Source of the DNA: Mizuhopecten yessoensis | Taxonomy: Eukaryota | Reading direction: 5' to 3' | NCBI RefSeq assembly: GCF_002113885.1 | Contig: NW_018407496.1 | Coordinates: 512,994 to 576,993, forward strand | Length of the DNA stretch: 64,000 nt | Shown here: piece by piece, positions 31,839-60,131 of the stretch | Layout: the number at the start of each line of letters is the position of its first letter | How positions within the stretch are numbered: the first letter of the stretch is position 1 | Translations under genes and position numbers: made by a program | The notes under the pieces: model-generated | What the model was told of the DNA's origin: nothing | Seen by the model: the letters and a program-made list of their open reading frames with translations, nothing else | The model's database searches: none

Positions 31839-31928
31839 CCATAGAAGAACAACCAACACTTCAAGATGAAATCAGTTCCAAGTCCGGAATCCTTCACAGA
31901 CTGGGAGCATTTCTGGGAGGACTTACCT
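31839..31928 (+). CDS. Giant low-complexity protein gene A, internal exon (xIEEQPTLQDEISSKSGILHRLGAFLGGLT)
   Basis: gatag| ... T|gtaagt, 90 nt, phase 1-1, compatible with the next exon. An in-frame ATG also lies at 31832. Confidence 0.55.
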
Positions 31929-32329
31929 GTAAGTAACCATAGTAGAGCTATAACAACCATTACATATTTAGTCTTCCCTGATTTAGTATCTGATCGATGG
32001 TAGACAGAGATATATTTCAAAAGGCTCTGATGTAAACTATATAAAATGTTGGTCCAGATTAAAGAATGCCTTTCTCAACAAACAAAAAAGAGATACAATA
32101 GTTACAATGGGACTCTTAACAGCAAGGCGAGCACTGTAAAAGATATATATCCTTTGGCTATTTAAGTCGTATCTTTCGAAACTTGTAGTCGATTGCGATA
32201 TTTCTGTGAAGTGCATACTAGGTTAGTTTACAAACGCAACAATTAACTTAACGGTATGTCATAAACATAAAAAAGTGTTGTCTTTCTATTTTTTTATCGT
32301 GTATTATTAATGTATGTCAAGATGCACTT

Positions 32330-32830
32330 ACCTTCCATATAAATATACGTTTACCATAAGATATACCATACCATATAATTTTATATTTAACATGTTTTTA
32401 CCACATAAAAACGTTTACCGTATAAATAAACATGTTCCATACAAATAAACCTGTACTTATAAATATAAGTTTACGATCTCAATAAACCTGTACTATGAAA
32501 TATATATTTACCATATGCATAAACCTGTATGTTATAAATAAACGTTTATCGTATATAGATATTTCTACTGTTTAGAAAAAGTTTACCATATAAATAAACA
32601 TGTTCCATACAAATAAACATTTACTCAATAAATAAACCGGTACTTATAAATATAGGTTTACCATCTCAATAAACATGTACTATAAAATATATATTTACCA
32701 TAAAGATATACCTGCATGTTATAAATATACGTTTATCGTATATAGATATCTCTACTGTTTAGAAAAAGTTTACCATATACAGATTTATGTATCATATAAA
32801 TATAAATGTACCCTACACATAAACGTTTAT
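32330..32830. repeat. Degenerate AT-rich tandem repeat (ataaataaacgtttaccat-like)
   Basis: Recurrent ataaataaac, tttaccata and ctgtacttat blocks, with a ~170-bp higher-order duplication. Confidence 0.7.
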
Positions 32831-32857
32831 ATTTACAGTTAAATTTCACAGTTCACA

Positions 32858-33043
32858 TATTCCGTCTTTGCGTATTGCAGAGTTATCTCTCTTGTGAGCA
32901 GGTATTGGTTACGTCATTGGTTTGTGAGAGTAACGTCATCAATTTTTGAGAAAACGACGTAATTTTCTCACACAAACCAATGACGTAACAATCAATCCCT
33001 GCTCACAAGAGAAGACAACTCTGCAATACGCAAAGACGGAATA
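32858..33043. mobile_element. 186-bp fold-back MITE
   Basis: tattccgtctttgcgtattgcagagtt... pairs with ...aactctgcaatacgcaaagacggaata. The arms are complementary over roughly 75 bp. Confidence 0.85.
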
Positions 33044-33137
33044 GATATACGTATACTGCAAATAAATATACATATGTATAATGTAAATGAATGCATGTAT
33101 ATACCAATATTGAAAATCTTACTGGTTTTTATCTTAG

Positions 33138-33286
33138 CACGGTGTAGACGACGGGTCAAACGAGTCAGAAATCACCGGAAACAGAGGACAAGTGTTAGTC
33201 AGAAACCAGGAAACAGCGGCGAGGAAAATTCCGTAAATGAAAACCGGTCATCAGCAATCTGTCCCGGAAAACAGAGCTCAGATGAG
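33138..33286 (+). CDS. Gene A exon, Arg-rich (SRCRRRVKRVRNHRKQR...QSSDE)
   Basis: tttttatcttag| ... GAG|gtaacc, phase 1 to 0, in frame with the giant exon. Confidence 0.7.
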
Positions 33287-33981
33287 GTAACCATAAAATA
33301 ATTTTCTCTTGGTATCAATGCGATGTTATATTTCCTTTTCCTGGATACTTACATGTTTTCAATATGATATTGTGTATTTGTGTATATCATTTAGGTATAA
33401 ACGCAAAGAGGAGTACTTCATTACAGTTCAAAATTAAAATATTTTTATAAATGAATAGGGAACTAAAATAGATAGCCTATTTTAGTTTAAAACTCGATTA
33501 AAACGCGGGCCCTTCATGGATAACCCTGCACCAAACATGTTTTAAGATAAATCGATGTTTCAGATGTGTCAGTAATGCTTGTGATGTAAAGTCTATTGAT
33601 AGATAAAAATAACAAGGAGATTAAGTAAACAACAAATGTCAACACCAATTTGTTCATCGTGGATAACGCAACATTTAAAGCCGCAAAGTAATAACAAATT
33701 GTGATATCACAATAGAATGTATGCAGCACATCACTTGACTTAGATGACATGAATCGATGTGTGAGATATGGCTGCATTTCGGTACTTTAGGTCAAATTCA
33801 AAAGTCAAATACAGATCGTGGTGACTCCGGTTTGGTACGCAACTTACAGCTTGACTGTACTTTGCTTGTATACTAAGAATGATGAATGCGAGATATACTG
33901 ATCCAATGTCGATTTAATACCACAGTCTATGATTTACTGAACATATTTGGGATATGAGCGATACTTTTTTTTTTTGTGCAG

Positions 33982-36900
33982 GATGGAAACATACCAATAG
34001 AGGAAAAAGTTGAAAATGGACACAACATTGTCACTTGCCATCACTCAGAACCGAAACACACCGAGTCGACTTTACCCCTAACAGAAGGAAACGTTACACC
34101 GCAATATCAGCATGGGCAAAGAGAAGAAAATGTACGATCTACGGAAAATGTACCAATGTCTGAGTATACGGGTAAAGACAATAGGTCAACTAATGCTAAT
34201 CATTCAATCTCACCGCTGCTTGGCGATACACAAACCTCCTCAGAATTACACCAAGTACTTCCCAAAGAAGAAAATAGCAAGCAGTCACCTCGAAAACTTT
34301 CTAGTCGTATTAGCAACACAGTACATGTTTACAAGTCTGCATCTACCTCCACCACCCGTGTAAAAAACCAAACCAGTAATTATTCTTTATCTCAGTCTCG
34401 AGGAATTCAGGAACTTTCAAGAAATGTCTTGGGTTCATTGCTAACCGCAAATGGTAACGTTACCAACGATTCATATAGATGGCTTGTCGACTCACGGAAA
34501 AAAACAGTCACTCCCTTCGGTGAATATGGTCATCCTCATTCGCATGACATAGGTCGTATAATTCAACCAAAGACTGTTATTCATCGAGGCAATAGCCCGA
34601 CACGTGGATCTTCCATACCTCTAACTTTACCTGATCATACTCAGTTAATTGACAGTAATAAATCTGAATCTGCCTTGCATATCTCTGCATGGAACCGATT
34701 GCCTCTTCGTCACAAAAGAACGTTAAATTTTAGTAGGAACTATGTACAGCATGGAAATGATGATTTAGAAGAGATTGGAGTAGAATTAATGTCAACAGTC
34801 AAAGAGTGGTGTTCTCAACATGATAGAAGTAGTATTGAATCCAACGTAACCATTGATAACCTACCACTACAAAATGATACCTTGGACGATTCTAACAAGG
34901 AAAACTTTCAACCTTTGCTCAAACTAGGTATAATTGATAAACCAGACAAACCTCAATCTCGTAACACTAAGAGTCATAACATCCTTGAAAGTGTCAATAC
35001 ATTGAAACTTGATAAGAACGACTTCGTCACAGGTGAGTTGACTACTGTGGAACAATATTCAAATGTTGGACCAGTTGTGTCTCCTCAGAAGGTTCTCAGC
35101 GACAATTTGAAAGTAGAAGAATTTAGTAATCCCGAAGATTATTCACCAGTGTTAATCAGTCAAAAGAAGCCAGTGTCAAGAAACAGGCAACAATCAGTGG
35201 CAAGCAATGGGCAACACTCAGAGACAACACACAAACAAATAGAAACAGCAAACACACAGCAATCAGAGGTCACAAAACGCCATCAACAGGAAGTTACAAA
35301 TAGTCTGCTAGTGGCAGCAAAAGCTCAACACATAAAAGCAATAAATTGCGAACAATCAAAAGCAACACATACACCACAAAAAGAAACAACAAATAGACAT
35401 GCACGGGAGACCAAAAATGGGAAACTGCAAGAGGCAACACATATACGTGGGGAGTCAGCAAACAACCAACAATCAGAGACCACAAAAGGGCAACAGTCAG
35501 AGACAACACTCAAAGAAATAGAGACAGCAAACAATCAACAACTAGAGATCACAAATGGGCGACAACCAAATACAACAAACAGACAGGAAGTGACAACAAA
35601 GCCTCAACAGATAAAAACAGCAAAGGCAACACACACAAAACAAATAGAAACAACACGTTACCAACAAGAAGACGACACACGTAGTCAACAACAAGAGACG
35701 GCAGACGAATACAAACTGGAGACAACAAAAATACAACAGCCAGACGCAACAAAAGGTCATCAACAAAGGGAAACAAATAATCAAATATCGGGTGAAATTT
35801 ACAAAGGACTACAGACAGGAACAAATGAAAAGCCAAATCAAGCAGGTGGACAACAACTACAAATAACAGGCCGTCAAACTTTAGAGGCAACCCATGGTCA
35901 AATAATAGAAACAACAAACGGTCAACAGCCGGGGCAGGCGAACAATCAACTTTCGCAAGAAATAAGCCGAAAGGAAGACCTTATAGAAACAAGAACGATG
36001 AAAAACCCTGCCATGGATGAAGAGAAACCATCTCAAACGTCAAATAGTGTTCGGGGGCCTGGTAACCACCGCGAAATGGAGCAACTGGATAATATTGGAT
36101 ATCAAACAAACGGGGAGGCATATACATATAAAAATGAGATGCATAAATATGGCAACAAGAAAGAAAACCATTTAAAAAATGACGGAGATTCTTCTGACAT
36201 GGATTCGAACCATATGCGCGAATACAAAGTCCTAAGCAACACAACGTTAACAAAGGCAAGTGATGCTAGAGATATGGCTTTGCGTTCTGTAGAAGAGTGT
36301 TCGGCTGCAATTAATGTTACATGTATTACCAATGAATACTCTTCAAAGACACTAATTCCTGACGATAAAGTTTCTAAGTCGAAAGGCATTGTCGTGGAAC
36401 AACAGTGTGGAGAAATCACTGTTGATGGTGAAGTGATTCACGTACAATCATCAGAAAGGCACACAAATGACCAAATCAACAACGCCACAGACATTTGTGA
36501 AAATTATTTGAACCAAAACACGGAAAGGAAAACATTGATTATGGAAAGAGAAACAAACACACGTGACAAGTTTTCGAGCATGGAAAGTAATTCCCAATCA
36601 TACCAACCACAAAAGGCAATGGTAAAATCTGTCGTTAATCTAAAGAACGAACAAAGCCCCGTAAAAATTTCAAAAGAACATACGATGACAGGAATAACTT
36701 CAGCGAAGCGTCAGAACGAGAACTCTCCACCCACAGAAGGACCCATGAAACTTTTGATATCTTCGAATACTTCGAATAACATCCATGACCGGCGGGAAGC
36801 AGCACGTGAATTGTCCTTCAAACTACGAGACGAAAAAGATGGTGACCTAAACATAAATGATTCGCGTCCAAAGGTGTCCCCCACAACCAAACAAACCAGC

Positions 36901-39900
36901 CAGATTAAAGATACAGTCATACCAGCGGACAGCTCTACTGGTGATGCTTCAACAAATAGGACAAAGCCTGGCATATACTCAACAACGAAACGAGTTGTGA
37001 TCAATAAATCTTTCTTCAGGAAAAGAAAGATTAACGAAACAACTGCAGATATGCTGAAAAATGACAAGACCGCAGCAACACATTCAGCAGAACGAGCTAG
37101 TGACAAAACAGATTTAATGAGTTTTAAAGATCAATCTAAACAGATGGTTGAAGATACCAACAAGCGTTGTGAGGGATATCATCCGGTGTTACAAAACCCC
37201 TGGATGATGACTTTCAATACTATTGATAGAGGCAACCAGAGTGGCGAACAAAAATGTACAAACGTGAAACTAGAGACATCGAGTAACAACAAGGAAGAGA
37301 ATAATGTAGAAACTCCCAACCAGATCGACCCTGCAAAACCAGCTTCCGTTTATAGAAAGGATGATTCATCTAAAGGTGAATCTGACCAAACAAACCGTGA
37401 AACAATTGAACCAGATTCAAAACGTGGTGCGGTCACATCGGCGAAGCCCTCTGATAGGGAAACCAATGAAGAAGTATTACTTACTGTTTCAATAGGCAAT
37501 AGTGAACTCTCGGAATTCTCCACTGAAGAGACCGTCTGTCCAAGTGCCGTCATACCAGACAAACCATTCGGAGAATCACGCCAGCTCCAAGTACAACCAA
37601 TGCAAGAACAGACCATCCATGATGCTCAGATGAAACATCTTCTTGATTCCATTCATGATCAAACCACAATAGAAAGTGATTTCTCTGATGATGTGAGTGG
37701 TGATTATTGTAACCACTCGGAAATGACACAAGATGTTCACATAATTAAGACTCTGCATGTGTCTTCACGAACAGATTCACCAGTTACACAACGAAAAGAT
37801 AATCCACCCGAGGAAAAGGTTACTTTGTTGAACAAAAGAGATAGACTTATGAAACCGTTGATGAAAAACATCATAAATGCTTCAAAAGAAAGTTCAACAA
37901 AAGCAGTAAATGCCGATAATGTTGACGGGAAAATTCAGTCGGAAAGTTGTACTTTACGCAAAGGTGAGCAACACAGCGGCTCAATGCCTAATATACAGCG
38001 AACGACTGTTCATAATGATAACGAAGATCGCCCCCGTGTTGTAATAAAATACAACCGGCAGCCGTATCCTCCTGAAGGGAGACCATTGAGTGCAAGTATG
38101 GGGTCATTCAGGTTCCATAAAATACAAGGCGTGTCTGGTGAACTTGAGAAAGCACAATCTTCAAATGATATTCGAGAAGATGGATATGTCGTCAAAGAAA
38201 CTGGATATGACACTGCCAAAGACAATGGTGATCAAGGAAATTGGACTAGCATTCACAGGGCAGACGTTTCTACAACAACGGGTCTGGAATCACCAAAAGG
38301 GAATCATGTCGATGCTTATTCTAAATCAGGAATCAACCAAAAATCTGTTTCAAATCCAAAGAGAGTCAGCAAACCCGCATCAAAGGTAGCTGTTGTTGTG
38401 GCTAAAAAGATCATGAACAAAAGGAAAACTGCTGCGCCACCTCTTCTCCGATTTGACAGCTATAAGGCAGATGATGACATTCAAATACCATCTGTCATTG
38501 CTTCTTACAAACGTTCGCCTGAAGTTGAGGGACTAACAAACGACACACAAGCATTTGGTCATCCTAACGGCCAATCAGAACAACCGTACGCAGAAGCCGA
38601 TATATACAGACAGAAAGATATAAATTCTGAAATCAATTCAGTCGGTTTTTCTCCAAGAGAACTAGCTTTCGCACAAAAGCTCTCTCATGGGGAAAGAAAA
38701 ACTATGACACCATCGAATATAGAAAAGGTGAGTTACCCTGATCTTGTTTCTTCAAACACAACACAAGATCACTCTGATTCTCGAGTGTCAAATTCACTAG
38801 GGACACCAATTAAATATTCTGAAAATCAACGAAAAAAAGCACTTCGTAAAAGTTTAAGTGGATCCGCTGCCTCGGATGATTTTCTTGAAATGGCAATGAG
38901 CGAGCGGAGGGTAGTTTTACCATCACGCTTCCAGGGAAGAAAGCAGAAAGTCGCGTCCTCTAGTCCTACTAGCCAAGCTAGTCAATATGGATCATCGTCT
39001 GATCCTAGACGTCGTCAGCAGCTGGAAAACAAACTTCATGGAAGTACCGACAGGAATAGAAACATGTTTCCATTTTCAAAAAGCACCGATTCTCCTCGCG
39101 TAATTCAAGCTTCAAAAAAGATTATGGTTAAAAGAGGTACACTGCATTCATCTCAGATAATAAATAGAAATGCTGATGTAGCTGATTCCTCTGGTGAACG
39201 CCCGGATGATGAACGGGTTGCACATTCAGGACATCCAATGTACCCACTCATCGGTGGAAGAACGTCTGGTGCGACATCTGTCGATCATGAACATGATTCT
39301 TTATTGCTTAATGATCAAGATACAGAACGAGAATACTATGAAATGGGAAAGTCGTCTGAACTATTAGACAGTGATGGAATGAGTTGTGGCTTTAGACAAG
39401 ATTTATCTCATTTACAAAACATTCTCGACGAAATTGAGCCAACAAAGAATATGAGTGGGTCTACAACCTCGAGCACGTTTTTGAGCACTGCGATAAGTGA
39501 ACGAAGAGCAATCTTTCCGTGTCGGCTAAGGAGCAAAGCCAACAACTCGACAACAGGTATCGGCCCTCCTGTACTTGCCTCCAAAAGAAGCACAACAGGT
39601 CTCCGCTATGTACGAGATAGCTCTGAAACGTCTATGCAAGATGGAAATAACAGTGTAATACCCACGGAGAGCTTTGAGAAAAACACTGGGGATGACCACT
39701 CTGGAATAAATATGGCCGCCGAAAGAACTGAAGTAAACATGATGGCAGATAGCTCACAGGGAAACATGACTGACGGTTATGAAGATCGACCTGATAGCAG
39801 TCATCTCCAACAAACAAAACGTGATGTGAATTCAGTAACTTCAGAGTATGCAGTGCAGCATTTTGAATCAAACAAATCACCAGAAGAAAAGATAAAGGCT

Positions 39901-40081
39901 GTCGCTAACAGGAATGTTCAGCTTCCTGTCCCAAAGCCCAGAGAAACACTTGTTCCGAGTAACTTTCCCGTTAACAAACATAGACTACCAACCGTCTATA
40001 ACCCGCTGAGGGAGACGGTAGCCGCGACAATCAATGCCCCGACCACACCAAGACTAACAACGGCTACTCCACTTGTAACAG
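33982..40081 (+). CDS. Gene A giant exon (6100 nt, ~2033 aa), S/T/Q/N/E/K-rich and predicted disordered, with an 8-aa Q/E/T repeat region
   Basis: Uninterrupted 2042-codon ORF bounded by the acceptor (t)11gtgcag| and the donor G|gtaaga. Confidence 0.9.
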
Positions 40082-40367
40082 GTAAGACGTCCAAGTTTAT
40101 ATAAATATATAAAGAGGTAAGTGCATCTTTCTAGACGTTTGATTTCCCCCTTATAAAAGTATTTTATTACCGCCGGTATTTGGATACTTCATTTAAAATG
40201 AAAATGTTACTTATAGTTATATAATATAATAAGTTTAATCTGAAAATTGTGGCATGTCTTAGAACTCATTAGAATAATTTATAAAAGATATCACAATATG
40301 AACGAATTCTGATAAAGCAATGCTACTAAACTCTTTAACAGTACATGTATTTCATTATCTCTCACAG

Positions 40368-40600
40368 CTGTTAGGGAAGACTCAGTTGAGGGAAATGAGA
40401 TAGTGAAACCCATTATCCGGAAGCCGGCGATGGAATCTATCCCAGCAGTGTCGAGGAAGATAAAGAACTTCCGGTCCAGACAGAAGATGGTGTTGACAGG
40501 GAGACTACATCAAAAGAGCGAGGAAAACTTGAAATTTTTTAAACAAATTTCAAAAACAACAGCCGATTTTTATAAGGATCGCACGAGAAATGTACAATAA
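40368..40600 (+). CDS. Gene A terminal exon (...SEENLKFFKQISKTTADFYKDRTRNVQ*)
   Basis: Acceptor ctctcacag| in phase 1, matching the donor at 40081. The TAA stop overlaps an AATAAA. Confidence 0.75.
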
Positions 40601-41323: not shown

Positions 41324-42779
41324 TAGGTATGTAGAAATCCAAAATCGTCATCTGAGAACATTGCAATCTACTATTTTACACGTTAACGTCCTCCGAATAC
41401 CATAACTGTGATAAACAGAAAAAGAAATCTCACAAAATAAGCGGATGCATTTCTGGATAAAAGTGTTGACTGTTAATAATGATGAAAGAGCAACGTACTT
41501 AGGTAGAACCTCAGTAAAGTTCAACAACATCATGCACTTACAATGATTTGTATCCAAGAATATAACTTACATTTACCTCATTATCTGATAAAATGATCCC
41601 TGTTGAAAATCCACCATTTGACGAGCAAAATTAATAAAAAGCATTTTTGCAGAAGAAATATCTTAACAATAATTGGTATTTTTTTCAGTTGTAAAAATGC
41701 AAGCTTTAACTGATCAGTTTTAATTTGACAAAAAAATCCGGTGTTCTCTCTGACTATTGTAAGCCTTTTTCATTCCTTTTCGGTAATGCAGCTGAAATTT
41801 CATGAATACTATTCGGTAAGTGCACTTTGTTTGAATAAAACTGTCTTTTTGAGCTATTCTGATGTTCTCGTAATTTAAACGTATTTTGACATTTGTTGAT
41901 GACAGAGAAAGGAAAAGACGATCAAGATAAAGCACATTTTACTAACAATGGTTTGTTGTGCTATATGCAATCACTTTTGAGATGTCTCCTTATGCTATAA
42001 TTTCCGTATTGTCGGAACCCGTAACAATGCGACTATTAGTTTTGTTTTTTTATTTTATTGACCAATCAGCATCTGTTATTCGTGTAACATCCGGAAAACC
42101 TCGTTTTGAAGTTTCATTAGCGGTAGCAACGAACATGGAAACGGGACAATCCGACCGTGGGTTACGGTCGGAAAAGTGTAATGACAATTAAGAAGAGGCG
42201 GAATAGGTTTTTGTTGTGTGGTAGTGGATGTAAGTATTCTTTTAAAATCCCACCTCATTGAATTTATATCATATAATTTGTATTACTGCGTTCTTGAACC
42301 TTCATTTGTTGCCATGTATCTGTTGTATCATTTTCATCTGCCATGTCTGCAAACAAATCATTATAAAATGCATTGGTTCATTACAGTTGACACCGTTGTA
42401 AGCGTCTGGTCGCTTTTTAAAGTTCTTCTTAATTCAGTCCACTACACTTCCGGTTGAATTTGGAGGCATTACAGAAGACATTATTTCTCAATAATAGTGA
42501 AATGTATGTACATGTGCAGTGGGTGGTAAAAGAAGTTGCATCCTAATTTCATTTAAAATATGGGTAGGCCTATTCAGTTATAAAAAGGACTAACAAGTCT
42601 GTATAAATCACAAGTCTCCAAAAAAGGGGTTATTTTACTATTAAGAGGTATAAACACATTGTGGTTAATTAGTTTCAAATCTGTCAATAAAACTATACTT
42701 GAAATTATACTGAAGTTATTAAAATGTTTCATTGGTTAAAAAATGCTTTTAAATTGGAATTAGGGAAGCCTATTTGTAT

Positions 42780-44756: not shown

Positions 44757-44885
44757 CAAGTGGTACAGTATCACCAAGAAGTTCCCCTTCCAATTCTTCA
44801 AGTACAATCAGCACCAGTTCAGGATATGTTAGTCTAAGGTTGGGCTTTTCCACCAGACTAAAAATCTTCTTTCGTAGAATATTGT
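44757..44885 (+). CDS. Gene B exon (xSGTVSPRSSPSNSSSTISTSSGYVSLRLGFSTRLKIFFRRIL)
   Basis: ttttag| ... T|gtaagt, 129 nt, phase 1-1. It is the first of nine phase-consistent exons. The start codon was not located. Confidence 0.65.
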
Positions 44886-45396: not shown

Positions 45397-45530
45397 CTCG
45401 TTTTCGTAGCAATAGAAGAAGAATTCATCCAAAGCGTCAATCTAGTATTTCTTTGATGGAAGATCACTCATTGTCTATCATCATGGAGTTACCTGAACAC
45501 TCAGAATCTTCACTCGTTTCAGGAACACAG
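45397..45530 (+). CDS. Gene B exon (SRFRSNRRRIHPKRQSSISLMEDHSLSIIMELPEHSESSLVSGTQ)
   Basis: tttatcag| ... CAG|gtaaca, phase 1 to 0. Confidence 0.7.
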
Positions 45531-46440: not shown

Positions 46441-46596
46441 TGTGCTGCATGATGGATTTCAGATAATTTTGTGTTATTTCACTTTATCAAATACTAAAGG
46501 AAAACAGAATTAAAAAAAAAAGTTTTTTAATTAAAAGAGAAAAAAAGAAAACTCTTACATAGGACATGTAATAAATTTATCCTGATATTTTTCCAG

Positions 46597-46657
46597 ATAG
46601 CACCATCCCCACCACCTTTATCTTCTGGTGTACAGAATATGATCAACCAATTAAGTG
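46597..46657 (+). CDS. Gene B exon (IAPSPPPLSSGVQNMINQLS)
   Basis: ttttccag| ... G|gtaagt, phase 0 to 1. Confidence 0.7.
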
Positions 46658-50221: not shown

Positions 50222-50397
50222 AAAAACAACCAATGAGCTGTTCTTCTAGAGGTAGCGTTCAGTCATTGTGGTCTGAAAATGAGAACGTGTCACCAACGGC
50301 TGCAGATTTGTCTCCACAACCTCCCTCCATTAGCAACATGTTTGATGTAGCCAACCTGTCTCCTGAAGCCCTGGAGAAAACCCTTGTTAACCAGCAG
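50222..50397 (+). CDS. Gene B exon (EKQPMSCSSRGSVQSLWSENE...EKTLVNQQ)
   Basis: tctttctgtag| ... CAG|gtagtg, phase 1 to 0. Confidence 0.7.
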
Positions 50398-50739: not shown

Positions 50740-52152
50740 TTTAGCTCCCCTGGCTGGAAGGGGCTACCAAGTTAGTTAAAATGAATTACTTTAACCCACT
50801 TTGAAGGTCACAGGGGTCAGATGTGTTAAAATATAGAAACAACTTCTTCTGAATAACCCAAAGGCCCAGGATTGTGTAATTTTGCCAGTAGCCTGCAGTG
50901 GTGAAGGGCTACCAAGTTTGTTCAAATGATGTTGACCAACTTTCATGGTCACTGGGGTCAAATGTTTTTAAAGACTTTAAACAGTTTTATTCACAATTAC
51001 CAAAAGACCCAGGATGATGATATTTGTCCAGTAGCGTGTTCAGATGAAGGGCTACCAAGCTTGTTCAACTCAATGATTGTTACCTACTCTCAAGGTCACG
51101 AGGATCAAATATATCTATCCATAACAAAATCTCTGAAATTTGGATCATATCATTCTGGGATGAAGGGCTTCCAAGTTTCTTCAAATGAATGACGTTGATC
51201 CACTTTTAAGGTATTCCATGTATAATGCATATTTTTTGGAAGTGAAAAAAAATACACACATGCCAGTGAAGTAGTTCCCAAATTTTTATGAACTTTTACT
51301 GCATATTTTTCCTGTTTTGATGCATTTTATAAGTACGCTCCACTGGGGCCGCTTTCTGTTCAAAGTCCAATAAAATAACGAAAACCTTCTATATGCAGAT
51401 AGTTATGATTTTGTTCACTTTTTGCAAACCATTTACTTTTATACACCGACAAATTGGTTAAACATTGTAGATTACAAATTTTCTATGGAAAAAAAAACTT
51501 TTTCCAGAAATACAAAAAAAATAAAATTGCATTTATGTATATTCAATATTGCCATGAAATTCAAATTTATGTACTCCATTTTTAATGGTACATAGTGAAA
51601 AAAATATATATTTGTACAACAAATTATATCAGATATAGATGAAAAAACATTTTTATTTTCTTGCAAAATCTCTTTACAATGCAAAAAACGTAATAAATCA
51701 AAGTTTTATCGTCTGAATTTTGAAAAAAATGTAAAGTTACACCCCCTTCCAATCCCTTGACAGTAATTTTGACGAGATTTTCTAAAAACGGCCGCGTAAA
51801 TAACGAACAGTCGCCATTTATTTACAATCCAGGTTTCCCCAGCGGGCGGTAACTCGTACCGAAAATGATGTCATGATTAGGGGGAATTCCGACATTACGA
51901 AGTTTCCAGATGTTAGCCGATGTTAACTGATTTCATTATACATGGAATACCTTAAAGTCACATGGATCAAATGTGTTGAATTTTTTTTAAATAATTGCCT
52001 CTTAATTACTATAGGACCAAGGTTGATGATGTTTGGCCAGTAGCTCAATTTAGACGATATATATACATCAACCTTGGTCAACTAATAGTGTGTAAGGTTA
52101 TTATTGTGAGATTAATACCAGGTGAACGGTACAGACCCATAGGCCTCTTGTT
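50740..52152 (+). mobile_element. Helentron/HINE-like non-autonomous element with internal diverged repeats
   Basis: 5' tttagctcccctgg and 3' ccaggtgaacg followed by the hairpin-like agacccataggcctcttgtt. Internal recurring aagggctaccaagtttgttcaaatga...aggtcac units. Confidence 0.6.
51210..51951. mobile_element. 742-bp non-autonomous TTAA-targeting DNA transposon (Kolobok-like), nested in the HINE-like element
   Basis: ttaa[ggtattccatgtataatg ... cattatacatggaatacc]ttaa. Perfect 18-bp TIRs with GG...CC ends. Confidence 0.85.
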
Positions 52153-52598
52153 ATTATTTGGCACAGAACACATTGTTTATACAAAAACAATAAGCAAATA
52201 ATGTTACTTGATAGTAATGTAGAGTCGTATTAATTCAAGGCTCAAAACAGAATGTTTTTGAACCATTGTGAAATGAAATCTTTTTAAGCTAAGGAGGTGT
52301 AGGAAGGGAATCAGTGACCTATAATCTGGTTATCTGGCTAAGATTCTCTAACAGTACAACCTCAGTTGGGATTCTGTAACAAAATCTTAGTCTTCAATTG
52401 AGATAACTAGATCTTGCTTTGTTACAGGAAATAGATTTTATATGTATCTCTTTTTTAAATTAGATCATTAATCATGTGAAGATTTTCACCCGATACCCAC
52501 TCTGAATACAGATACATTGTATTGCATGAATTCATGTGACCAACCCAATGCAAACAATTTAATACAAAGTCCAGTTACCAACATGTATTGCAGAATCA

Positions 52599-53180
52599 TG
52601 ACCTTTGGAAATGTGTAACTTAGTCTGAAACCTTGTTAGTCAGATCCTTGTCATTCAGGAACTTTGTCAGTCAGGAATCTTATTAGTCAGTAACTTTGTT
52701 AGTGAGGAACCTTGTTTGTCAGGAACCTTGTTTGTCAGGAACCTTGTTTACTAAGACCTTTCTGAGTCAGGAACATTGATATCCAACAACCAAGTGTTAT
52801 CAAGGCATCCTTTTAGTAAGGAACATTTTTAGCAAGGACTTTGTTAGTCAGCAACTTTGTAAACCAGTAATTTTATCAGTCAGGNTGACCTTTGGAAACG
52901 TGTAACTTAGTCTGAAACCTTGTTAGTCAGATCCTTGTCATTCAGGAACTTTGTCAGTCAGGAATCTTATTAGTCAGTAACTTTGTTAGTGAGGAACCTT
53001 GTTTGTCAGGAACCTTGTTTGTCAGGAACCTTGTTTACTAAGACCTTTCTGAGTCAGGAACATTGATATCCAACAACCAAGTGTTATCAAGGCATCCTGT
53101 TAGTTGGGAACATTTTTAAGCCAGACATCATGTTAGCCATTGATATTGTTTGCCAGGGATGTTGTTTGTTGTTAATCAGA
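52599..53180. repeat. Degenerate ~16-bp repeat with a ~215-bp near-exact duplication across an N (52885)
   Basis: aggaaccttgtttgtc units. 52599-52810 matches 52886-53098. Confidence 0.75.
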
Positions 53181-53397
53181 ACTTTTGTTATTCAGACACT
53201 TTATTAGAGTACAATAAGTGAACCGTTCTGCTGATCAGGTCAGCAACAGGTATGCAAAATAACGTGAGGAAACATGGTTACATCTCCTGTGAGCCCTTTA
53301 TGTTATAAATGTGAGCAGATTTGGTAGAGACGCGAGTCTGATTTGCGTAATTCACATTATATTTAAGAATAATTAGTTTTGTTGTCAATGCTAACAG

Positions 53398-53473
53398 ATT
53401 AACCCATATGATGAACATAAAGAAGCAAGTTCAGAAAGCATGGAGGTCAACAAAGCCTACTGTAGGAATGAAA
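53398..53473 (+). CDS. Gene B exon (INPYDEHKEASSESMEVNKAYCRNE)
   Basis: ctaacag| ... A|gtgagt, phase 0 to 1. Confidence 0.7.
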
Positions 53474-53845
53474 GTGAGTATACATGTTAGGTTCAGTGAA
53501 TCTTGTATCAAAGGCCAAATAAGGAAAAGGCAAATATGCTTGCTAGCTGATAAGGAGAGAAATTTGTTTTTATTTACAAAAATAAATCTTTGGTTTTGAT
53601 TTTAAATGTTGAAGAGATGGGAAGTCCTATACATGAAAAAAAGAAAAATGTTTAGAAAAATTCTAAGATTTCTCCTAAAAGGAAAGAACTTGTCTCTCAT
53701 AAAGGTCACAGTGTAAGATCATAAAATAGGACAAAAATTGAAGAATCGGTTGGAGCATTGAAGGAATTTTAGTTGCAAAGTCCATTATTTTAAGATGGAA
53801 AGAAAGTAACTTTTACTCGTATTTTGAACTGATGAATTTTTCCAG

Positions 53846-56789
53846 ATGCAAAACAACGAGAAAAACCTATGAGTCTGATATCCTCAACAGCATCCTGTGA
53901 ATTACCTGGTGCTATGGGTACTGTGGTGGAGAAAACAAATTGCTGCACGACCACAGTGAAGATGGAGAACAGGACAGAAAGCAAATCTGTCCAATTCCAA
54001 AACAATGTCATAGTGTATCCAAGTCCTTCTGGTGTAGTGGACACTAACTCAAGCAGTGGACAGATGACAGTGGAATGTCTGTCTGACCTCCGGTCAGAGG
54101 GACTCCGCGTAGGCGAGGACTGTAAGGCTAGGAGACCAGCCACACCTGGCAAACTTCTCAATGAAGGGGAGACAACTGCCTCCCAACCCCTGACGCCTGC
54201 ACCTATGAATGAAGGAAAGAAAACAGTCTCTCCACCTCAGACATCCACATATGTGACTGTGAAAGATCCAGATTACACCCCTCGTACTCCACGGAACACT
54301 GTAAAACCAGAGAGTGACAAAGGAAAGACTAACACATCTTTACCTCAATGTACAGCTAGTAGCCAACAGACCAAGACACTGATTGAAGAGTCTAAAGGAG
54401 ATCTCTATGTTAAAGAAGTTGGAAATAGTTCTACCTTGGACAATGACATTCCCCCAGAAGAAGTGTGTGCCAAGCGCTCGTGGAGTAGATTAGATCTTTC
54501 AACTTATCCAACAAACGATGACTGCTTCAGAACAAGTGAGAAAGTTTTGTCTGGCGAGGAAAGAAATGAGAAAGTAAGGAAGAATATGTCTGACGTCAAT
54601 GTTGTTGATACTGACAGGCAGGAATTAGAGGAGAAAGCTAGGCGACGAGCAGACAGGAAGAAAAGAAAAGAAATGAGAATGGCTGCTGAAGGTTACATAA
54701 AAGAACAAGAAAACCTACCTCAGGAGGAGAAACGTAAATTAAAAAAAAAGGCAAAAAAGAAAAACATTCAAAAGAAAACAGCAATAAATAGTGAAGAGCC
54801 AGCCGGCCAAAAGGAATACAGACACCAGAGAGTAATGAGATTGGAGGCAGAGAGAGACACAACAAATCTCAATGGACAGGAAGGTAGCGATGGTACTGTC
54901 ACATTTGAAGATAAACTACTACACTGGGAAAAAATGAAAACAACAGGAGACAATCGCTCACTTGATGGTCAGGAGGAAACAAACAAACCTGCTAGGAAAA
55001 CGAGAACAAAAAAGAAGAAAAACAGAGAACTACCAGCAGCTGGAGATGAGGGTATGGGTACTGAGAAAGCAAAGAGGAAAGAAAGGACACACATGGAGCA
55101 TGACGTGAATAAAGAAGATATCCTAGGGTCTGGAGAAGAGACTGGTGAGTGCATAGAGCCTATAGAACATGCAATGCATCCACACAAAAAGCCACATAAA
55201 TACAACGAAAGCAGATATAGAGAAGACACTGTTTTAAAGCACAGCAGTGATGATGAGATACACACTTATCATGTAGACCATTCAAAGATTTATTGTGAAG
55301 ACAATTCCAAGATTGGACAGGCAGATTCAAACTTTCTAGATGAAATTGGTAAGGAGAAGCTCTCTCAAGAGGAACGAAGAAAAAAACAGACCAAAAGGAA
55401 AAAAATGAAAGAGGCCATAGCAGCAGGAAATGAACACTCGAATGACATGAGGAAGGAATATCCAGATGACCAGGTTATCACTCAGATGAGCAGAGAAGAC
55501 AATGATTACCAGAGGGAACATGTTACTGATCAAGACAAAATTGAGGGGATGCAGCAGGAAATTGCAGAAATCTTAGGTCTGTCATCAAATTCAGACCAGG
55601 CACAAAGAATTAAACATAGACGAGGAATGGTCAACAAAGATACCAATCACATTTTCAAGGATGAGCAAGGATGTGAAAACAGTGGAAACCAAAAGTCTGA
55701 AGATTTCGAAGCACTTAGATATGAAAGGGACTCAGCTATTGGTTTCCAAAATGAGAAAGGTAATGCCAAATCAAAAAGTAAACTCATGAATTTTACATGT
55801 GGGGAAAGAATCCAGCAACAGAAGTCCAGACAAAAGAGAAAAGTCAAAAACTTAAATGACGATCAATTATCCAGTGCAGTTTTTACTTCAGAAAATCCTA
55901 TCATCCATGATGGATACCCTGTAATTACAGATTCTGTCTCTCCTCAAACGGTGATGAATGAGGATGTTTTAGATGTAAATCCCATCCCTTTGACATCCAG
56001 TTATGAAAGTAACGCTCCTGTTCAAAGTGAATCAAATAAGAAGTATGTTCATGCAGGAGTGGGACCAACACATTCTGAAGATGTTTCACAGAAAGCTGTT
56101 CATGTGGCCAAAACCAAACCTGTGACTGTTGCTAGTGGAGAAAGACGTAGAAAGTCTTCAAACAAAAACAGGGACAACCGAGACAATTCTACAACTGATG
56201 AAGTGAGCTCTACATATGTTAAAGGGCACAAACAGTCCCCTGGTGGTCAACACATTGGTCAGCAGTACTCTGTTGACCACCAACATGTCTCTTTATATCC
56301 AGAGGAAGAAGAAGATGACCACACAGTCAACTTCCACAAAGATCTTTCGTCCCAAGTTTCGACATGGGCACCTGGAAACCAACCCAGGATGCAGGACAGG
56401 GTACAAACTGCAGAAAATTACTTGCTGATGGCAAAACAGGACAGTTCATTGGAAACACCAGGCATTGGTGGAAACAGAAAGGGACATTTTAATGAAGAAG
56501 ATAGGGTCACCCACAGTTCATCAACATATCCAAGGGAGAGAGATGCCTCAAACCACATCAACATTACCACCAGAGATGGTGACCTTCTACCTACAGCGCC
56601 TACTTCACCAGAAAGTGACGAGGATAGACAGCGCGAACAAGTGTCAAGTCATCAGGATGTAAAGGATCACTATCTGTCAATCACAGAACTAGATCGTCCA
56701 AGGCCGGTCGGATGTGATGTGGATATAGATCTGGGTCGAGAGATGAAGCCTGGATTAGAATCGGCTGTCAGGAGGATGAACCAATTGGG
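53846..56789 (+). CDS. Gene B giant exon (2944 nt), charged and disordered with K/R-rich tracts
   Basis: tttttccag| in frame with the 974-aa ORF. Donor GG|gtgagt, phase 1 to 2. Confidence 0.9.
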
Positions 56790-57327
56790 GTGAGTAGACC
56801 ATCACATGGTCTACATAAACGTAACTAGGTCAAGAAAAAAATACAAATCTTTTGAAAGTTATGACACAGGTCTGAGAAGTTTCTATTGTAGTGCACCTCT
56901 GGGTAGCTAAAATGAAAAACTTGTGACAAGCTTCAGAAATTTCATATAAAATATTCATATTAAACTTAAATGAGCCCAAGAAATAGGTTCATAGTTCACT
57001 ATTAAACATTTATTATTATTCAATATTCATAAGAAGTTATTTTCCAGGTATAGTTTTTGCGGTAGTTTAAATTTCACCTTCTATAATAAGGGAAAATTTA
57101 TCATGTGAGGGCAAATATTAGTACACACCATACATTGCATAGTCATTACATTAGAAGAATGAAAATAACACAGGGCAAATATCAATTTTACCGGTGCAGG
57201 GTAAAAGTTTGACTAGGTGAAAGTTTCCCAGTATGACATGTTTTATGTAGGAATTTGTAATAAGTGTACAAGCATATTTTGAAACATGTTTACTTTATCT
57301 GTATACATTTTGTTGAAGAACCTACAG

Positions 57328-57559
57328 TGGCAGTATTAGTCGGCCGGAGTCTAGATCCCTGTGGAGTACTTCCACCATGAGTATCCCCCACTCCATCCAG
57401 GAAGAGGATGAGACAGAGGAGTCGGAGGATCAGACAGGACAAGATCCTAGTGATGAGGATAGAGGAGAAGAGATATCCTACACAGATACAGGACAAGAAA
57501 ACCATATCAAGTATCCAGCACCGGGTCCCAGGGAGGAGCTGGCTCCAAACGTGTTTAAG
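57328..57559 (+). CDS. Gene B exon (GSISRPESRSLWSTSTMSIPHSIQEEDE...APNVFK)
   Basis: cctacag| ... AAG|gtaact, phase 2 to 0. Confidence 0.75.
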
Positions 57560-57883
57560 GTAACTTAGTCAGATCCAGGGTGCGTTAAAAAGGAGTCAAG
57601 TACAGACATTCTTGTGGTGTGTGTTTCATAAAATTATTAGCTGATTAGCGTTGAAAAGATTTAAGCATGTCCTATAAAAAGTGAACAGGAACAGCCCAAC
57701 CTTTAAATGATACATCTCGATAACCATCTACAGCATGTCATCTGCAATTAATGTAACTGTATTGAGAAAAAGCAAGGTTTAAAAATGGATGGCATGTATT
57801 TAACAATGCTATGTTCTTGAAGCATTTTACCAATAAGATGATGGATCGCTGACTATTCCATTAATAGTAAGTATGGTTGACAG

Positions 57884-57983
57884 GTGGATAAGATGAACCT
57901 GCCACCGGTATGTGTGGTACAGAAGGAGGATGTAACTAAATCAGCTAGTGTGAGAAAACCCGGGCACAGCACTATTCAGACAG
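57884..57983 (+). CDS. Gene B exon (VDKMNLPPVCVVQKEDVTKSASVRKPGHSTIQT)
   Basis: ttgacag| ... G|gtaaac, phase 0 to 1. Confidence 0.65.
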
Positions 57984-58320
57984 GTAAACATGGAAATCTT
58001 TAGTACTGTAACTAGTGTTAGGTCTGCTGAACAATAACCACTAGGGTAAGATTGGAGATTCTGTTTTCAATGAAACTTTTCCCAAGTGAATTATTCCCCT
58101 TTGCTTGTTTGACATGTTTGTCGAGTGCTTACTTCAGGCTTCACTGTAAAAATACTAGTTAATATTATAAATTCATAAAAAAAGCTTCATTATTGAGATC
58201 AAACACTGCTGAATGGGGCTAATGAAAGCATTTCCCTGTATAATATGGTATGCTGCTGTCTTCATTATGACTAATGGTGCTCATTGTCAGATAAAATGAT
58301 GAACTATGTCCTGATTTCAG

Positions 58321-60131
58321 GTAAAGAACAGGACAGTCGTACAGAGGACATCAGACCTGTAAGTAAGCAGGTCAGAGTTGATGACATACAAAGCAGATTA
58401 TCTCCTGAACTGGAGACCTTTCTCGCTCAGTACAGTGATCTTAAATCTGACGTGGAAGCGAGCTTGATCCCAGATCAGACCTGGGAAGAGATTACTAAAC
58501 CCATAGGTCAATTCAGACCCAAGGCAAGATACTCTGCTGACAAACCTCAGGGAATACAGGGTCAGAAACTACATATCACAGAAGGGAATGATGAGCCGAG
58601 TATAGCTAATCCAACTCCTACAATGCTGCCTGCTCATTTGAATAGAAAACAGAGAGCACATTATGAGAAACTCCAAGTGACTTTCCGTGCCCCAGAAAAG
58701 AATCTTCCAGGAGCCCAGTTTTGGAAAGATTTAAATGCAGATAAGTTGGTATCAGAAGCTGTTTCACAGGATCTGTTCATCAAGACACCATTCGGTCATA
58801 CCTTCCCAAACGAATGTGAGAATCAACAGATGTCTCCTATCAAAGCTTATCTTGATGACTATTCTCATCAGAGTGATGCTGCATTAGATGAGACAGGGTA
58901 TGAAAGTATGGAGCAGTTGGAGAACTATGACAACAGTCCAGAGTCATTGTCTGACCTGAGGAACAAGCTGAGTAAGATTTGCAGTGAGGAGGTCGAGTCA
59001 GACCCAGCTCCACGTCCACCGTCTCCACCTGGTGGAACGGACATGATTGAAGTATCCACAGATCCTAGATTCTGGAAATCACATGACTCATCAGGCAGGG
59101 ATTCGTCTCGATTGTCTGCTGAAGTTTTATCAAGAATTGAGAATTGTGCAGGTCAGAATGTCGACATGTTACAGTTTGCTGATGAAAACAGTAGCTACGA
59201 AGATGAACAATTTCATGAAGATTACAAAGAGCCCTCCTATGCACCAAGCCTAATAGATCGCTATCACTCAAAAAATGAAGAAAATATTGACTTCTTCAGA
59301 TGTGTTTCTAGAGGAGGTCTGAACAATATACAATCACTGAGGACAGAAGAGGAGAATATTGCTAGATCCTTTGCTAGAACAGACTCTAGGGAACACACAG
59401 TTGATGATGAAACAGTCGATGCCAACTTACTCTTTTTCAAAACAGTAGCAAGATATCCCGAGTTTAATGAGCAGGAGATTGAGACCACTGACTCTAAGGT
59501 TGTCAAGTCGAGATGTGGCAGGAGGAGTCCGGGGTTCATTCCTGATGATCCCAGCAACTACATCAGTGGAGAAGTAGCTCACCAAAACTTAGAATTCTTC
59601 CGAGCTGTAGCCAGAGACACCAGCTTCTTCAAGTTACCTGACAAGGAGGACCAGGACAGTGAGGACAATTCTGATGAAGATTCTACACCACCAAGAAATA
59701 AGCTTGAAGCTGATTCTTCCCTACAGAACGACACAACTAGCTGTCACAAAGACAGGTCTCATCACCATACCAAAATGCCTAGTCAGAAACCAGCTTCCAA
59801 AATATTGAATCGCTTTCAACGCAAGACATTAGCACAAGATCATTTGGACAGTCAAAAGACGGGTCCTCCTCATCTGTCTAAGTTGTACTCCAAAAGGACT
59901 GATGGCCTCAGTCTCTTACAACCAGTGGTGTCTCCCTGCAAAGCCAAGGAAAACATGGACTTCTTTTTACAAGTCTCTAAGGATCCTCATTTCTATAAGA
60001 TTGCAGAAAAACCAGAAGTACCAGTAATGGTAGCTCCGAATAATAAACCAAAGTCATACAAAGGCATCAATGTCAACAGTGGGCGACCCATAGGCAAGAA
60101 GGGACTAGGCTTCAAGTCACGACTTACCTAG
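58321..60131 (+). CDS. Gene B terminal exon with four ENLxFFxxV[SA][RK] repeats
   Basis: ctgatttcag| in phase 1, within the 615-aa ORF ending at TAG. The nine exons total 5663 nt (~1890 codons) with no stop. Confidence 0.88.

What the first reader, a model, noticed from the sequence alone, without database searches (positions are those of the whole stretch)
31839..60131. Two adjacent giant disordered-protein genes share exon architecture and an unrecognised C-terminal motif: a candidate new gene family
Seen in the sequence: gene A (~2190 aa) and gene B (~1890 aa) show no recognisable domain or bulk similarity, yet they are built alike. Each has a phase-1 exon ending in an amphipathic stretch (GILHRLGAFLGGLT vs GFSTRLKIFFRRIL). 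In both, this is spliced through a split Ser codon into an Arg-rich phase 1-to-0 exon (SRCRRRVKRVRNH vs SRFRSNRRRIHP). Each then has a multi-kb exon and a phase-1 terminal exon carrying the same motif (EENLKFFKQISKTTADFYK in A, KENMDFFLQVSKDPHFYK in B). Inference: these are ancient tandem paralogues that kept only an N-terminal amphipathic/basic targeting module and a C-terminal binding motif around a fast-evolving spacer, which would suit a long tether or scaffold.
Basis: partly seen in the sequence, partly recalled or inferred. Interest (0 to 1): 0.8.

Follow-up and report, generated by a model that had tools for sequence, protein, structure and literature searches.

The report
Undescribed bivalve disordered-protein family, tandem pair
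Two neighbouring, expressed scallop genes encode very long, mostly unstructured proteins that are old duplicates of each other and belong to an unnamed protein family, also found in mussels, whose hallmark is a short repeated helix (ENLxFF...F[FY]) of unknown binding partner.

Summary
The split-Ser phase-1 junction occurs in both genes, and the last intron is phase 1 in both. Both genes are spliced and expressed.

Corrected models:
- Gene A: 5 coding exons, 31162-40600, 2196 aa.
- Gene B: 10 coding exons, 42181-60131, about 1906 aa.
- The C-rich block at 46.9-49.8 kb is an intronic 18-bp satellite, not coding.

A and B are true paralogues. Their C-terminal parts score 22-32 bits, against at most 6.7 bits for 1000 locally shuffled decoys. 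A family profile built without A picks A's last exon as the second-best hit in the 988-Mb genome.

The A-then-B tandem is kept in Argopecten and Pecten. B-like proteins with five or six motif copies and the same MTI.KRR..LC.GS start exist in Mytilus.

I found no Pfam family, no meaningful PDB relative and no paper. AlphaFold gives disorder with one short helix per motif copy.

The "amphipathic" N-module is not more amphipathic than shuffles. The tether or scaffold function is untested.

Verdict: a real, undescribed, lineage-restricted family of disordered proteins with a repeated linear motif. It is moderately interesting.

The parts
31162..31180 (+). Gene A coding exon 1 (MSGSTS plus 1 base, phase-1 donor T|GTAAGT)
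   Evidence: Found by pattern. It matches the Argopecten start MSGNGSST plus T|GTAAGT. The 7096-nt RNA contig leaves about 179 nt upstream of exon 2. The joint itself was not seen.
31839..31928 (+). Gene A exon 2, phase 1 to 1, ends ...GILHRLGAFLGGLT plus T
   Evidence: matches Argopecten model P0002
33138..33286 (+). Gene A exon 3, phase 1 to 0, (S)RCRRRVKRVRNHRKQR basic stretch
33982..40081 (+). Gene A exon 4, 6.1 kb, open, predicted disordered. Contains shared block 1 (PVPKPRETLVPSNFPVNKHRLPTV) at 39925-39996.
   Evidence: the donor at 40081 is seen in RNA
40368..40600 (+). Gene A exon 5 (phase 1), the conserved 77-aa tail with TGRLHQKSEENLKFFKQISKTTADFYK at 40496-40576 and the stop at 40598-40600. 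The 3' UTR runs to at least 40945.
   Evidence: RNA joint 40081|40368 in contig X1 and one X24 read; 76-82% identity to Argopecten and Pecten; hit by the family profile
42181..42229 (+). Gene B coding exon 1, MTIKKRRNRFLLCGSG plus T, phase-1 donor
   Evidence: 16/16 identical to P. maximus isoform X1; donor read; no RNA coverage in X1
44757..44885 (+). Gene B exon 2, phase 1 to 1, Ser-rich then LRLGFSTRLKIFFRRIL plus T
   Evidence: the RNA contig starts here and shows joint 44885|45397
45397..45530 (+). Gene B exon 3, phase 1 to 0, (S)RFRSNRRRIHPKRQ. It holds the internal Met (MEDHSLS) used as the start by P. maximus isoform X2 and by the Mytilus californianus model.
46597..46657 (+). Gene B exon 4
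   Evidence: The loose end of the RNA contig after 45530 maps here with 1 mismatch; orthologue match
50222..50397 (+). Gene B exon 5
   Evidence: orthologue tblastn; splice sites read
53398..53473 (+). Gene B exon 6 (small, phase 0 to 1)
   Evidence: tblastn of orthologue segments; splice sites
53846..56789 (+). Gene B exon 7, 2.9 kb, E/K/S-rich, predicted disordered
57319..57559 (+). Gene B exon 8 (an alternative in-frame acceptor lies at 57328). It ends with the first half of block 1, PAPGPREELAPNVFK (57515-57559).
57884..57983 (+). Gene B exon 9. It starts with the second half of block 1, VDKMNLPPVC.
58321..60131 (+). Gene B exon 10 (phase 1). It holds block 2, YEKLQVTFRAPEKNLPGAQFWKDL (58662-58733), and GFIPDDPSNY (59532-59561). 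The four motif copies are at 59256-59318, 59418-59471, 59580-59633 and 59946-59999. The stop is at 60129-60131.

Best explanation
Genes A and B are two separate, transcribed, tandemly duplicated paralogues. They belong to an undescribed protein family of pteriomorph bivalves (scallops, mussels, and four unnamed transcriptome or metagenome sequences).

Family members are long and almost wholly disordered. They carry a few conserved islands in a fixed order:
1. A short basic N-terminus. In B and in mussels this is MT[IV].K.RR..LC.GS followed by a hydrophobic and Arg-rich stretch. In A it is a shorter version. The same phase-1/phase-1/phase-0 introns occur in both genes.
2. Block 1: P.E.L.P..F...K..L..V.
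3. Block 2, in B and mussels only: Y.K.QVTF+A...N.P.A.FW.D.
4. One copy (A) to six copies (mussel) of an 18-aa unit, [DE]-N-[LIM]-x-F-F-x-x-[VI]-[SA]-[KR]-x-x-x-F-[FY]. Each copy is predicted to form a short helix.

B keeps the full ancestral layout. A is the derived copy: it kept only the N-module, block 1 and the 'GR.H....ENL.FF' motif copy around a 2000-aa fast-evolving spacer.

Inferred, not shown: the motif helices are docking sites for a folded partner. Several copies give multivalent binding. The basic, Cys-containing N-terminus places the protein on a membrane or another acidic surface. On this reading the proteins act as long scaffolds or tethers.
For: Gene models and expression:
- A spliced RNA contig of 7096 nt (A) carries the joint 40081|40368.
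- A spliced RNA contig of 5675 nt (B, depth 371) carries the joint 44885|45397 and runs on into 46597.
- The B contig length equals the summed exons 2-10 (5672 nt) within a few bases.
- All exon pieces are open, and the coding lengths are multiples of three.
- RefSeq or GenBank models in Argopecten, Pecten and Ylistrum have the same ends.

Paralogy:
- phmmer of the last 700 aa of B orthologues against the last 300 aa of A gives 21.8-31.7 bits. The best of 1000 local-shuffle decoys gives 6.7. The match falls in two colinear stretches.
- hhalign gives E 3.5e-5.
- tblastn cross-hits have E 2e-4 to 6e-3.
- A profile of B and mussel sequences finds A's last exon as the second hit in the whole genome, E 0.007.
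- Block 1 has 8 invariant columns across A, B and mussel.
- N-termini of Argopecten A and Ylistrum B score 68; no decoy of 2000 global or 3000 local shuffles reached that (best 56 and 64).
- Intron phases are identical.

Family breadth:
- An exhaustive phmmer search of 1.84 billion representatives finds only 9 proteins.
- Mytilus members have five strict motif copies plus one degenerate copy.
- The mussel N-terminus aligns with that of B.

Age: the A-then-B tandem is kept in Argopecten and Pecten.

Constraint: dN/dS is 0.14-0.28 at the ends and 0.32-0.53 in the big exons.

Disorder and helices:
- The exons lie below the Uversky boundary, unlike the neighbouring genes.
- AlphaFold2 gives mean pLDDT 50.7, with a helix of pLDDT 70-88 at each motif copy.
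- There is no transmembrane-like stretch.
Against: - No partner, localisation or tissue is known, so the docking and scaffold part is inference only.
- N-module similarity is weak when only the window's own exons are compared (p 0.06-0.1), and for two of the three orthologue pairs (p 0.005-0.08).
- The N-module is not more amphipathic than shuffles.
- B's exon 1 is not covered by the RNA contigs examined, and an unspliced contig covers 44039-44786. The N-terminal module may therefore be isoform-specific, as in P. maximus isoform X2.
- The regular 46-58-aa spacing of motif copies could simply reflect tandem duplication.
- Only one profile-free exhaustive search could be run, so wider relatives may have been missed.
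Confidence: 0.6

Rival explanations
1. The family consists of divergent, unrecognised members of an already described metazoan family of disordered cytoskeleton- or membrane-associated proteins. On this reading the motif already has a known partner.
For: Disordered proteins lose detectable similarity fast; the big exons are only 42-53% identical even among scallops. Only one exhaustive search could be run, with a single sequence. The word-index profile search was insensitive: it missed known members P0009 and P0011.
Against: There is no Pfam hit at E up to 1 for any exon or for seven family members, apart from one spurious repeat hit. The PDB profile search gave only a chance 18-bit match. No paper holds the motif strings or the gene identifiers. 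The ESM Atlas gave nothing. The patterns of FFAT, PIP box, GoLoco, DPF and NPF are absent.
Confidence: 0.15
2. The motif array binds a periodic polymer lattice (microtubule or actin filament), one helix per subunit repeat, as in MAP- or nebulin-like proteins. It does not bind a soluble hub protein.
For: Motif copies are regularly spaced: 46-58 aa in Mytilus, about 50 aa in P0009, and 47 and 54 aa in B, even though the linkers diverge. K/E/R-rich stretches occur in the big exon of B. Each copy is an isolated short helix in an otherwise extended chain.
Against: Gene A keeps a single copy under strong constraint (dN/dS 0.14-0.19), which suggests that one copy works alone. There is no similarity to any known filament-binding repeat. 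The spacing may be a relic of tandem duplication.
Confidence: 0.15
3. The shared features are chance or compositional resemblance between two unrelated lineage-specific genes that happen to be neighbours.
For: Both proteins are of low complexity. The motif is short. The N-module comparison of the window's own exons is not significant (p 0.06-0.86).
Against: The decoy test gives 22-32 bits against at most 6.7. Block 1 and the motif are colinear. The genome-wide profile search picks A's exon. Intron positions and phases are identical at both ends. The motif residues are conserved in orthologues across three scallop genera and in Mytilus.
Confidence: 0.04
4. The Arg-rich N-terminal stretch is a nuclear localisation signal, and the proteins are nuclear or chromatin scaffolds rather than membrane or cytoskeletal tethers.
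For: RCRRRVKRVRNHRKQR in A and RFRSNRRRIHPKRQ in B look like classical basic import signals (the consensus is from my own knowledge). Further K/R clusters such as RRRADRKKRKE occur in B.
Against: In B and in mussels the basic stretch lies next to a conserved Cys within MT..K.RR..LC.GS at the extreme N-terminus. That arrangement is more typical of acylated, membrane-bound N-termini (my own knowledge, untested). Nothing was tested either way.
Confidence: 0.06

Closest known systems
RefSeq 'uncharacterized protein' models: LOC117316758 and LOC117316777 (Pecten maximus), LOC132544670 (Ylistrum balloti), the Argopecten irradians 2247-aa model and 'enolase-phosphatase E1-like', LOC127729017 (Mytilus californianus), LOC134707798 (M. 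trossulus)
   Same: These are direct orthologues (scallops) or family members (mussels). They have the same N-terminus, blocks, motif array and exon layout.
   Different: None has a described function, domain or paper. The name 'enolase-phosphatase E1-like' is a low-complexity artefact. The P. maximus A gene appears to be split into two models of 1022 and 1255 aa.
Multivalent short-linear-motif scaffolds in general, for example endocytic adaptors with DPF/NPF arrays or the FAM21 tail with LFa repeats (my own knowledge)
   Same: A long disordered chain, several copies of one short motif near the C-terminus, a small targeting module at the other end, and fast-evolving spacers.
   Different: No sequence relationship. 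The DPF, NPF and clathrin-box patterns are absent from the motif copies. The partner is unknown.
FFAT motif (EFFDAxE, binds the VAP MSP domain; my own knowledge)
   Same: Two adjacent Phe residues preceded by acidic residues.
   Different: Position 4 is Arg, Lys or Leu instead of Asp, and position 5 is not Ala. No FFAT pattern is present, even a loose one. The motif is predicted helical, whereas FFAT binds in an extended form.
TubY C-terminal region, PDB 7C7Y (bacterial plasmid partition protein)
   Same: An 11-residue stretch, QNMEFFAAVAK, resembles QNLEFFRAVAR.
   Different: The score is 18 bits, E 0.013 in a PDB-sized search. The protein is a bacterial coiled-coil tetramer (PMC7762940). I read the match as chance.

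Membership tests
Bivalve ENLxFF-repeat family (defined here from scallop B orthologues and Mytilus proteins) | At least one copy of N-[LIM]-x-F-F-x-x-[VILM]-[SA]-[KR] followed by F-[FY] about 4-5 residues later | tested here: met
   A has 1 copy and B has 4. Argopecten and Pecten A have 1. Mytilus has 5 strict copies plus 1 degenerate copy.
Bivalve ENLxFF-repeat family | Block 1, P.E.L.P..F...K..L..V, upstream of the motif array | tested here: met
   It is invariant in A (3 species), B (3 species) and Mytilus (2 species). In the window it lies at 39925-39996 in A and at 57515-57559 plus 57884-57913 in B.
Bivalve ENLxFF-repeat family | Block 2, Y.K.QVTF+A...N.P.A.FW.D, and G[YF]IPDDP.NY | tested here: inconclusive
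   Present in B (58662-58733 and 59532-59561) and in all mussel-type members. Not seen in gene A or its orthologues on inspection, but no dedicated search for these two blocks was run against A's 2033-aa big exon (phmmer and hhalign covered only A's last 300 and 158 aa). A appears to be a reduced member.
Bivalve ENLxFF-repeat family | N-terminal module: a short first exon, then a phase 1-1 exon and a phase 1-0 exon that join a hydrophobic stretch to R-[CF]-R plus a basic run | tested here: met
   Phases were read from the sequence. The sequence similarity is significant for one orthologue pair and marginal for the others. The mussel N-terminus aligns with B.
Any Pfam-A family | Score above the gathering threshold | tested here: not met
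   Zero hits at E up to 1 for all window exons. For the relatives there is only a spurious Bac_rhamnosid6H hit on a mussel internal repeat.
FFAT / PIP-box / GoLoco / DPF / NPF linear motifs (consensus from my own knowledge) | Match to the published core pattern | tested here: not met
   A regex scan of all exon translations found none of these patterns in either gene.
LIR (Atg8-interacting) motif (consensus from my own knowledge) | [WFY]-x-x-[LIV] preceded by acidic residues and bound as an extended strand | tested here: inconclusive
   The core F-x-x-[VI] and the acidic residues upstream are present in every copy. However, the x positions are mostly basic and the segment is predicted helical. 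Binding is not testable here.

The most novel reading that the evidence does not exclude
The 18-aa ENLxFF...F[FY] helix is a new class of short linear motif that docks onto a conserved cellular hub, for example a cytoskeletal or trafficking protein. The family, conserved since before scallops and mussels split, would then be a bivalve-specific set of multivalent adaptors. Gene A would show that a single motif copy at the end of a 2000-residue spacer is enough to work, which amounts to a natural 'minimal tether' experiment.
Probability: 0.25. Interest if true: 0.6.

Novelty: new variant of a known kind. Interest (0 to 1): 0.38.

Why it matters
Mollusc genomes are full of 'uncharacterized' long disordered proteins, and few have any handle for study. 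This pair offers one:
- a sharply defined, repeated, strongly conserved helical motif;
- two further conserved blocks;
- an N-terminal module;
- a natural comparison between a multi-copy paralogue (B, highly expressed in one RNA data set) and a single-copy paralogue (A).

That makes the partner directly findable by peptide pull-down. It also gives annotators a profile with which to name a family that is now unnamed or misnamed. It is not a new kind of biology as far as the evidence goes.

Tried and rejected
- Pfam on all exons and on seven relatives: nothing real.
- PDB profile search: only TubY 7C7Y at 18 bits, a bacterial coiled coil, judged to be chance.
- ESM Atlas feature search: best score 0.76, meaningless.
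- Word-index profile search with alignment A1: it returned only two input sequences, so it says nothing about absence.
- Word-index search with the mussel C-terminus: only Mytilus and scallop hits.
- Paper searches for motif strings, LOC identifiers and run accessions: nothing relevant.
- I first suspected that the C-rich 46.6-50.1 kb stretch was a hidden giant exon, because it has long open frames without start codons. I rejected this. The frame that follows exon 4 has stops. Orthologues skip the stretch. It is an 18-bp satellite.
- The idea that A and B are one gene: rejected. A has a stop codon, a 3' UTR and its own RNA contig at 20-fold lower depth. B has its own conserved start exon.
- A search for an A-like second copy within 10 kb of the Mytilus genes: none found.
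- The taxa of P0008-P0011 could not be established.
- Raw-read runs X20 and X23 gave no reads on the stretch, so they are no test.
All searches used single exons by reference or database proteins. The joined-model search is left out.


Full report
**Setting.** The window is G000:C4169:512994-576993 of a 988-Mb assembly in 82,659 contigs. The closest database proteins come from Pecten maximus, Argopecten irradians and Ylistrum balloti, so it is a scallop genome. Upstream on the + strand lie a BCAR3-like gene (SH2 and RasGEF-like exons, 2754-7459) and two B-box/NHL-like paralogues.

**Check of the observation.**
- In gene A the exon ending ...GILHRLGAFLGGLT stops at 31928 with one spare T before GTAAGT. 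The next exon begins at 33138 with CA, giving a split TCA Ser followed by RCRRRVKRVRNH.
- In gene B the exon ending ...GFSTRLKIFFRRIL stops at 44885 with a spare T. The next exon begins at 45397 with CT, giving a split TCT Ser followed by RFRSNRRRIHP.
- Both following exons end in phase 0.
- The strict motif N[LIM].FF..[VILM][SAT][KRQ] occurs five times in the six-frame translation of the whole window. One copy is in A's last exon and four are in B's. Shuffles of the 3763 coding residues give 0.0002.

**Gene models.** The models rest on splice signals, orthologue proteins and RNA.

Gene A has five coding exons: 31162-31180, 31839-31928, 33138-33286, 33982-40081 and 40368-40600. That is 6591 nt, or 2196 aa.

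Gene B has ten coding exons: 42181-42229, 44757-44885, 45397-45530, 46597-46657, 50222-50397, 53398-53473, 53846-56789, 57319-57559 (or from 57328), 57884-57983 and 58321-60131. That is 5721 or 5712 nt, or 1906 or 1903 aa.

All pieces are open, and both totals are multiples of three. Intron phases at the 5' end are 1, 1, 0 in both genes, and the last intron is phase 1 in both.

**RNA evidence.**
- In run X1 a 7096-nt contig covers the end of A's big exon, skips 40082-40367 (GT..AG) and ends in the 3' UTR at 40945. One raw read of an independent RNA-seq run (X24) shows the same joint.
- A 5675-nt contig of about 20-fold higher depth starts exactly at 44757 and skips 44886-45396 (GT..AG). After 45530 it continues with letters that map to 46597 with one mismatch.
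- Its length equals the sum of B's exons 2-10 (5672 nt) within a few bases.
- B's exon 1 is not covered. A low-depth contig runs unspliced over 44039-44786. P. maximus also has an isoform that starts at the internal Met of exon 3. The N-terminal module may therefore be isoform-specific.

**What the C-rich block is.** The stretch at 46.9-49.8 kb, with GC skew down to -0.93, is an 18-bp satellite of about 160 copies inside B's intron 4. Orthologue proteins go straight from exon 4 to exon 5, and the frame that follows exon 4 contains stops.

**Are A and B related?** Yes. The evidence is as follows.
- phmmer of the last 700 aa of three B orthologues against the last 300 aa of A orthologues gives whole-sequence scores of 13-32 bits. 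Ylistrum B gives 21.8 and 31.7. For that query the best of 1000 locally shuffled decoys gives 6.7.
- The matches fall in two colinear places. The first is a stretch of 37-94 aligned residues (85-94 for the Ylistrum query) around P.P.PRE.L.P..F, the core of block 1. The second is the ENLxFF motif.
- tblastn of B orthologues against the window cross-hits A at 39913-40065 (E 2e-4 to 3e-3) and at 40493-40561 (E 6e-3).
- hhalign of an A alignment against a B-plus-mussel alignment gives E 3.5e-5. It pairs A's ...TGRLHQKSEENLKFFKQISKT... with the family's 'GR.H....ENL.FF' copy.
- A profile built without any A sequence was searched against all six frames of the 988-Mb genome. It returned B's last exon, then A's last exon (E 0.007), then a 209-bp haplotig copy of A's last exon, and nothing else.
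- Block 1 has eight invariant columns across A (three species), B (three species) and Mytilus (two species).
- The N-terminal comparison is weaker. Argopecten A against Ylistrum B scores 68, and no decoy of 2000 global or 3000 local shuffles reached that (best 56 and 64). The other pairs give p 0.005-0.08, and the window's own exons give p 0.06-0.86. The identical intron position and phase is the better argument here.

**The family.**
- An exhaustive phmmer search with B's last exon against 1.84 billion representatives found nine proteins: scallop B orthologues, a 1282-aa Mytilus californianus protein, and four unnamed sequences from transcriptome or metagenome assemblies.
- Mussel proteins carry five strict motif copies plus one degenerate copy, spaced 46-58 aa apart. 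They also carry block 1, block 2 (Y.K.QVTF+A...N.P.A.FW.D) and G[YF]IPDDP.NY.
- Full-length mussel models (M. trossulus and a Logan transcript) begin MT[IV]TK.RRK..LC.GS and carry an Arg/Ile-rich stretch, as B does.
- B therefore keeps the ancestral layout and A is a reduced paralogue.
- The A-then-B tandem, on the same strand, is kept in Argopecten (11.8 kb apart) and in Pecten (2.9 kb apart).
- No A-like gene lies within 10 kb of the Mytilus genes.

**Properties.**
- The big exons and the last exons lie below the Uversky charge-hydropathy boundary. The neighbouring BCAR3-like and NHL-like exons lie above it.
- No stretch is hydrophobic enough for a membrane span.
- AlphaFold2 on P0010 with the family alignment gives mean pLDDT 50.7 and pTM 0.17. 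Short helices of pLDDT about 70-88 sit exactly at block 2 and at each motif copy.
- On alignable codons, dN/dS is 0.39-0.53 for A's big exon, 0.32-0.34 for B's, 0.14-0.19 for A's last exon and 0.22-0.28 for B's.
- The tails of the N-module are not more amphipathic than shuffles (p about 0.43). The motif copies have moderately high hydrophobic moments (p 0.02-0.24).

**Comparison with what is known.**
- There is no Pfam family.
- The only PDB match is an 18-bit resemblance to the bacterial TubY C-terminal coiled coil, 7C7Y, which I take as chance.
- No paper holds the motif strings or the gene identifiers.
- The patterns of FFAT, PIP box, GoLoco, DPF and NPF (consensus sequences from my own knowledge) are absent.
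- The LIR core F-x-x-[VI] is formally present, but in a basic, helical context, so that comparison is inconclusive.
- Databases list the members as 'uncharacterized protein', and one as 'enolase-phosphatase E1-like', which is a low-complexity artefact.

**How it most likely works.**
- Shown: two real paralogous genes of an undescribed family, disordered, with conserved helical motif islands.
- Inferred: the motif helices dock on a folded partner, several copies add avidity, and the basic Cys-bearing N-terminus targets an acidic surface such as a membrane. The proteins would then be long scaffolds.
- Rivals are binding to a filament lattice (suggested by the regular spacing), nuclear localisation through the Arg-rich stretch, and membership of a known family too diverged to detect. 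None could be tested here.

**Verdict.** The paralogy and 'unrecognised family' reading is supported. The functional reading is untested, and its 'amphipathic' detail is not supported. The finding is a solid annotation-level discovery of a lineage-restricted disordered-protein family with a new repeated motif. It is moderately interesting, and it is not a new kind of system on present evidence.

Noticed in passing
window 46936-49815: An 18-bp satellite (consensus TACCACTCACAATTTACC, about 162 copies, 72% matches) that is almost free of G on the + strand (GC skew to -0.93). It fills most of intron 4 of gene B. It gives long open frames with no ATG/GTG/TTG, so the ORF listing does not show them.
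   Followed up: yes
window 60108-60228: A 24-bp minisatellite of 5 copies (GGCTTCAAGTCACGACTTACCTAG). Each unit reads GFKSRLT-stop in frame. The first unit supplies gene B's last 7 residues and its stop codon. Orthologues end ...GLGFKSRYSS instead.
   Followed up: partly
window 43128-43933, minus strand: Two ORFs that look like the C-terminal part of a non-LTR retrotransposon reverse transcriptase lie between genes A and B. Short RNA contigs map there.
   Followed up: no
window 13298-15034 and 21870-23093: Two tandem paralogues of a B-box/coiled-coil/NHL-like gene. Their N-terminal halves are nearly identical. The second loses the open frame after about 400 aa, and both have similar flanks.
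   Followed up: no
L012 (G000:C10799:1-209): A 209-bp orphan contig carries a second copy of the end of gene A's last exon with one change (ENLKFF to ENLNFF). It is probably an unmerged haplotype.
   Followed up: partly
L009 (Pecten maximus LR736839.1:9750525-9756721): The P. maximus gene A orthologue seems to be split into two adjacent gene models of 1022 aa and 1255 aa, 50 bp apart. Together they have about the length of the Argopecten model (2247 aa).
   Followed up: no
window 38929-39627 against P0002 residues 951-1701 and 1800-2173: Gene A contains an internal repeat unit (YGSSSDPRRRQQLE ... FSKSTD.PRV ... NMSGS..SS.FL..A.SERR..FPSR.RSK). Argopecten and Pecten carry one more copy than the window, so copy number varies among scallops.
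   Followed up: partly
window 44039-44786: An RNA contig of low depth (10.6, against 371 for the spliced form) runs unspliced across the acceptor of gene B's exon 2. It could be a retained intron or an alternative first exon.
   Followed up: no
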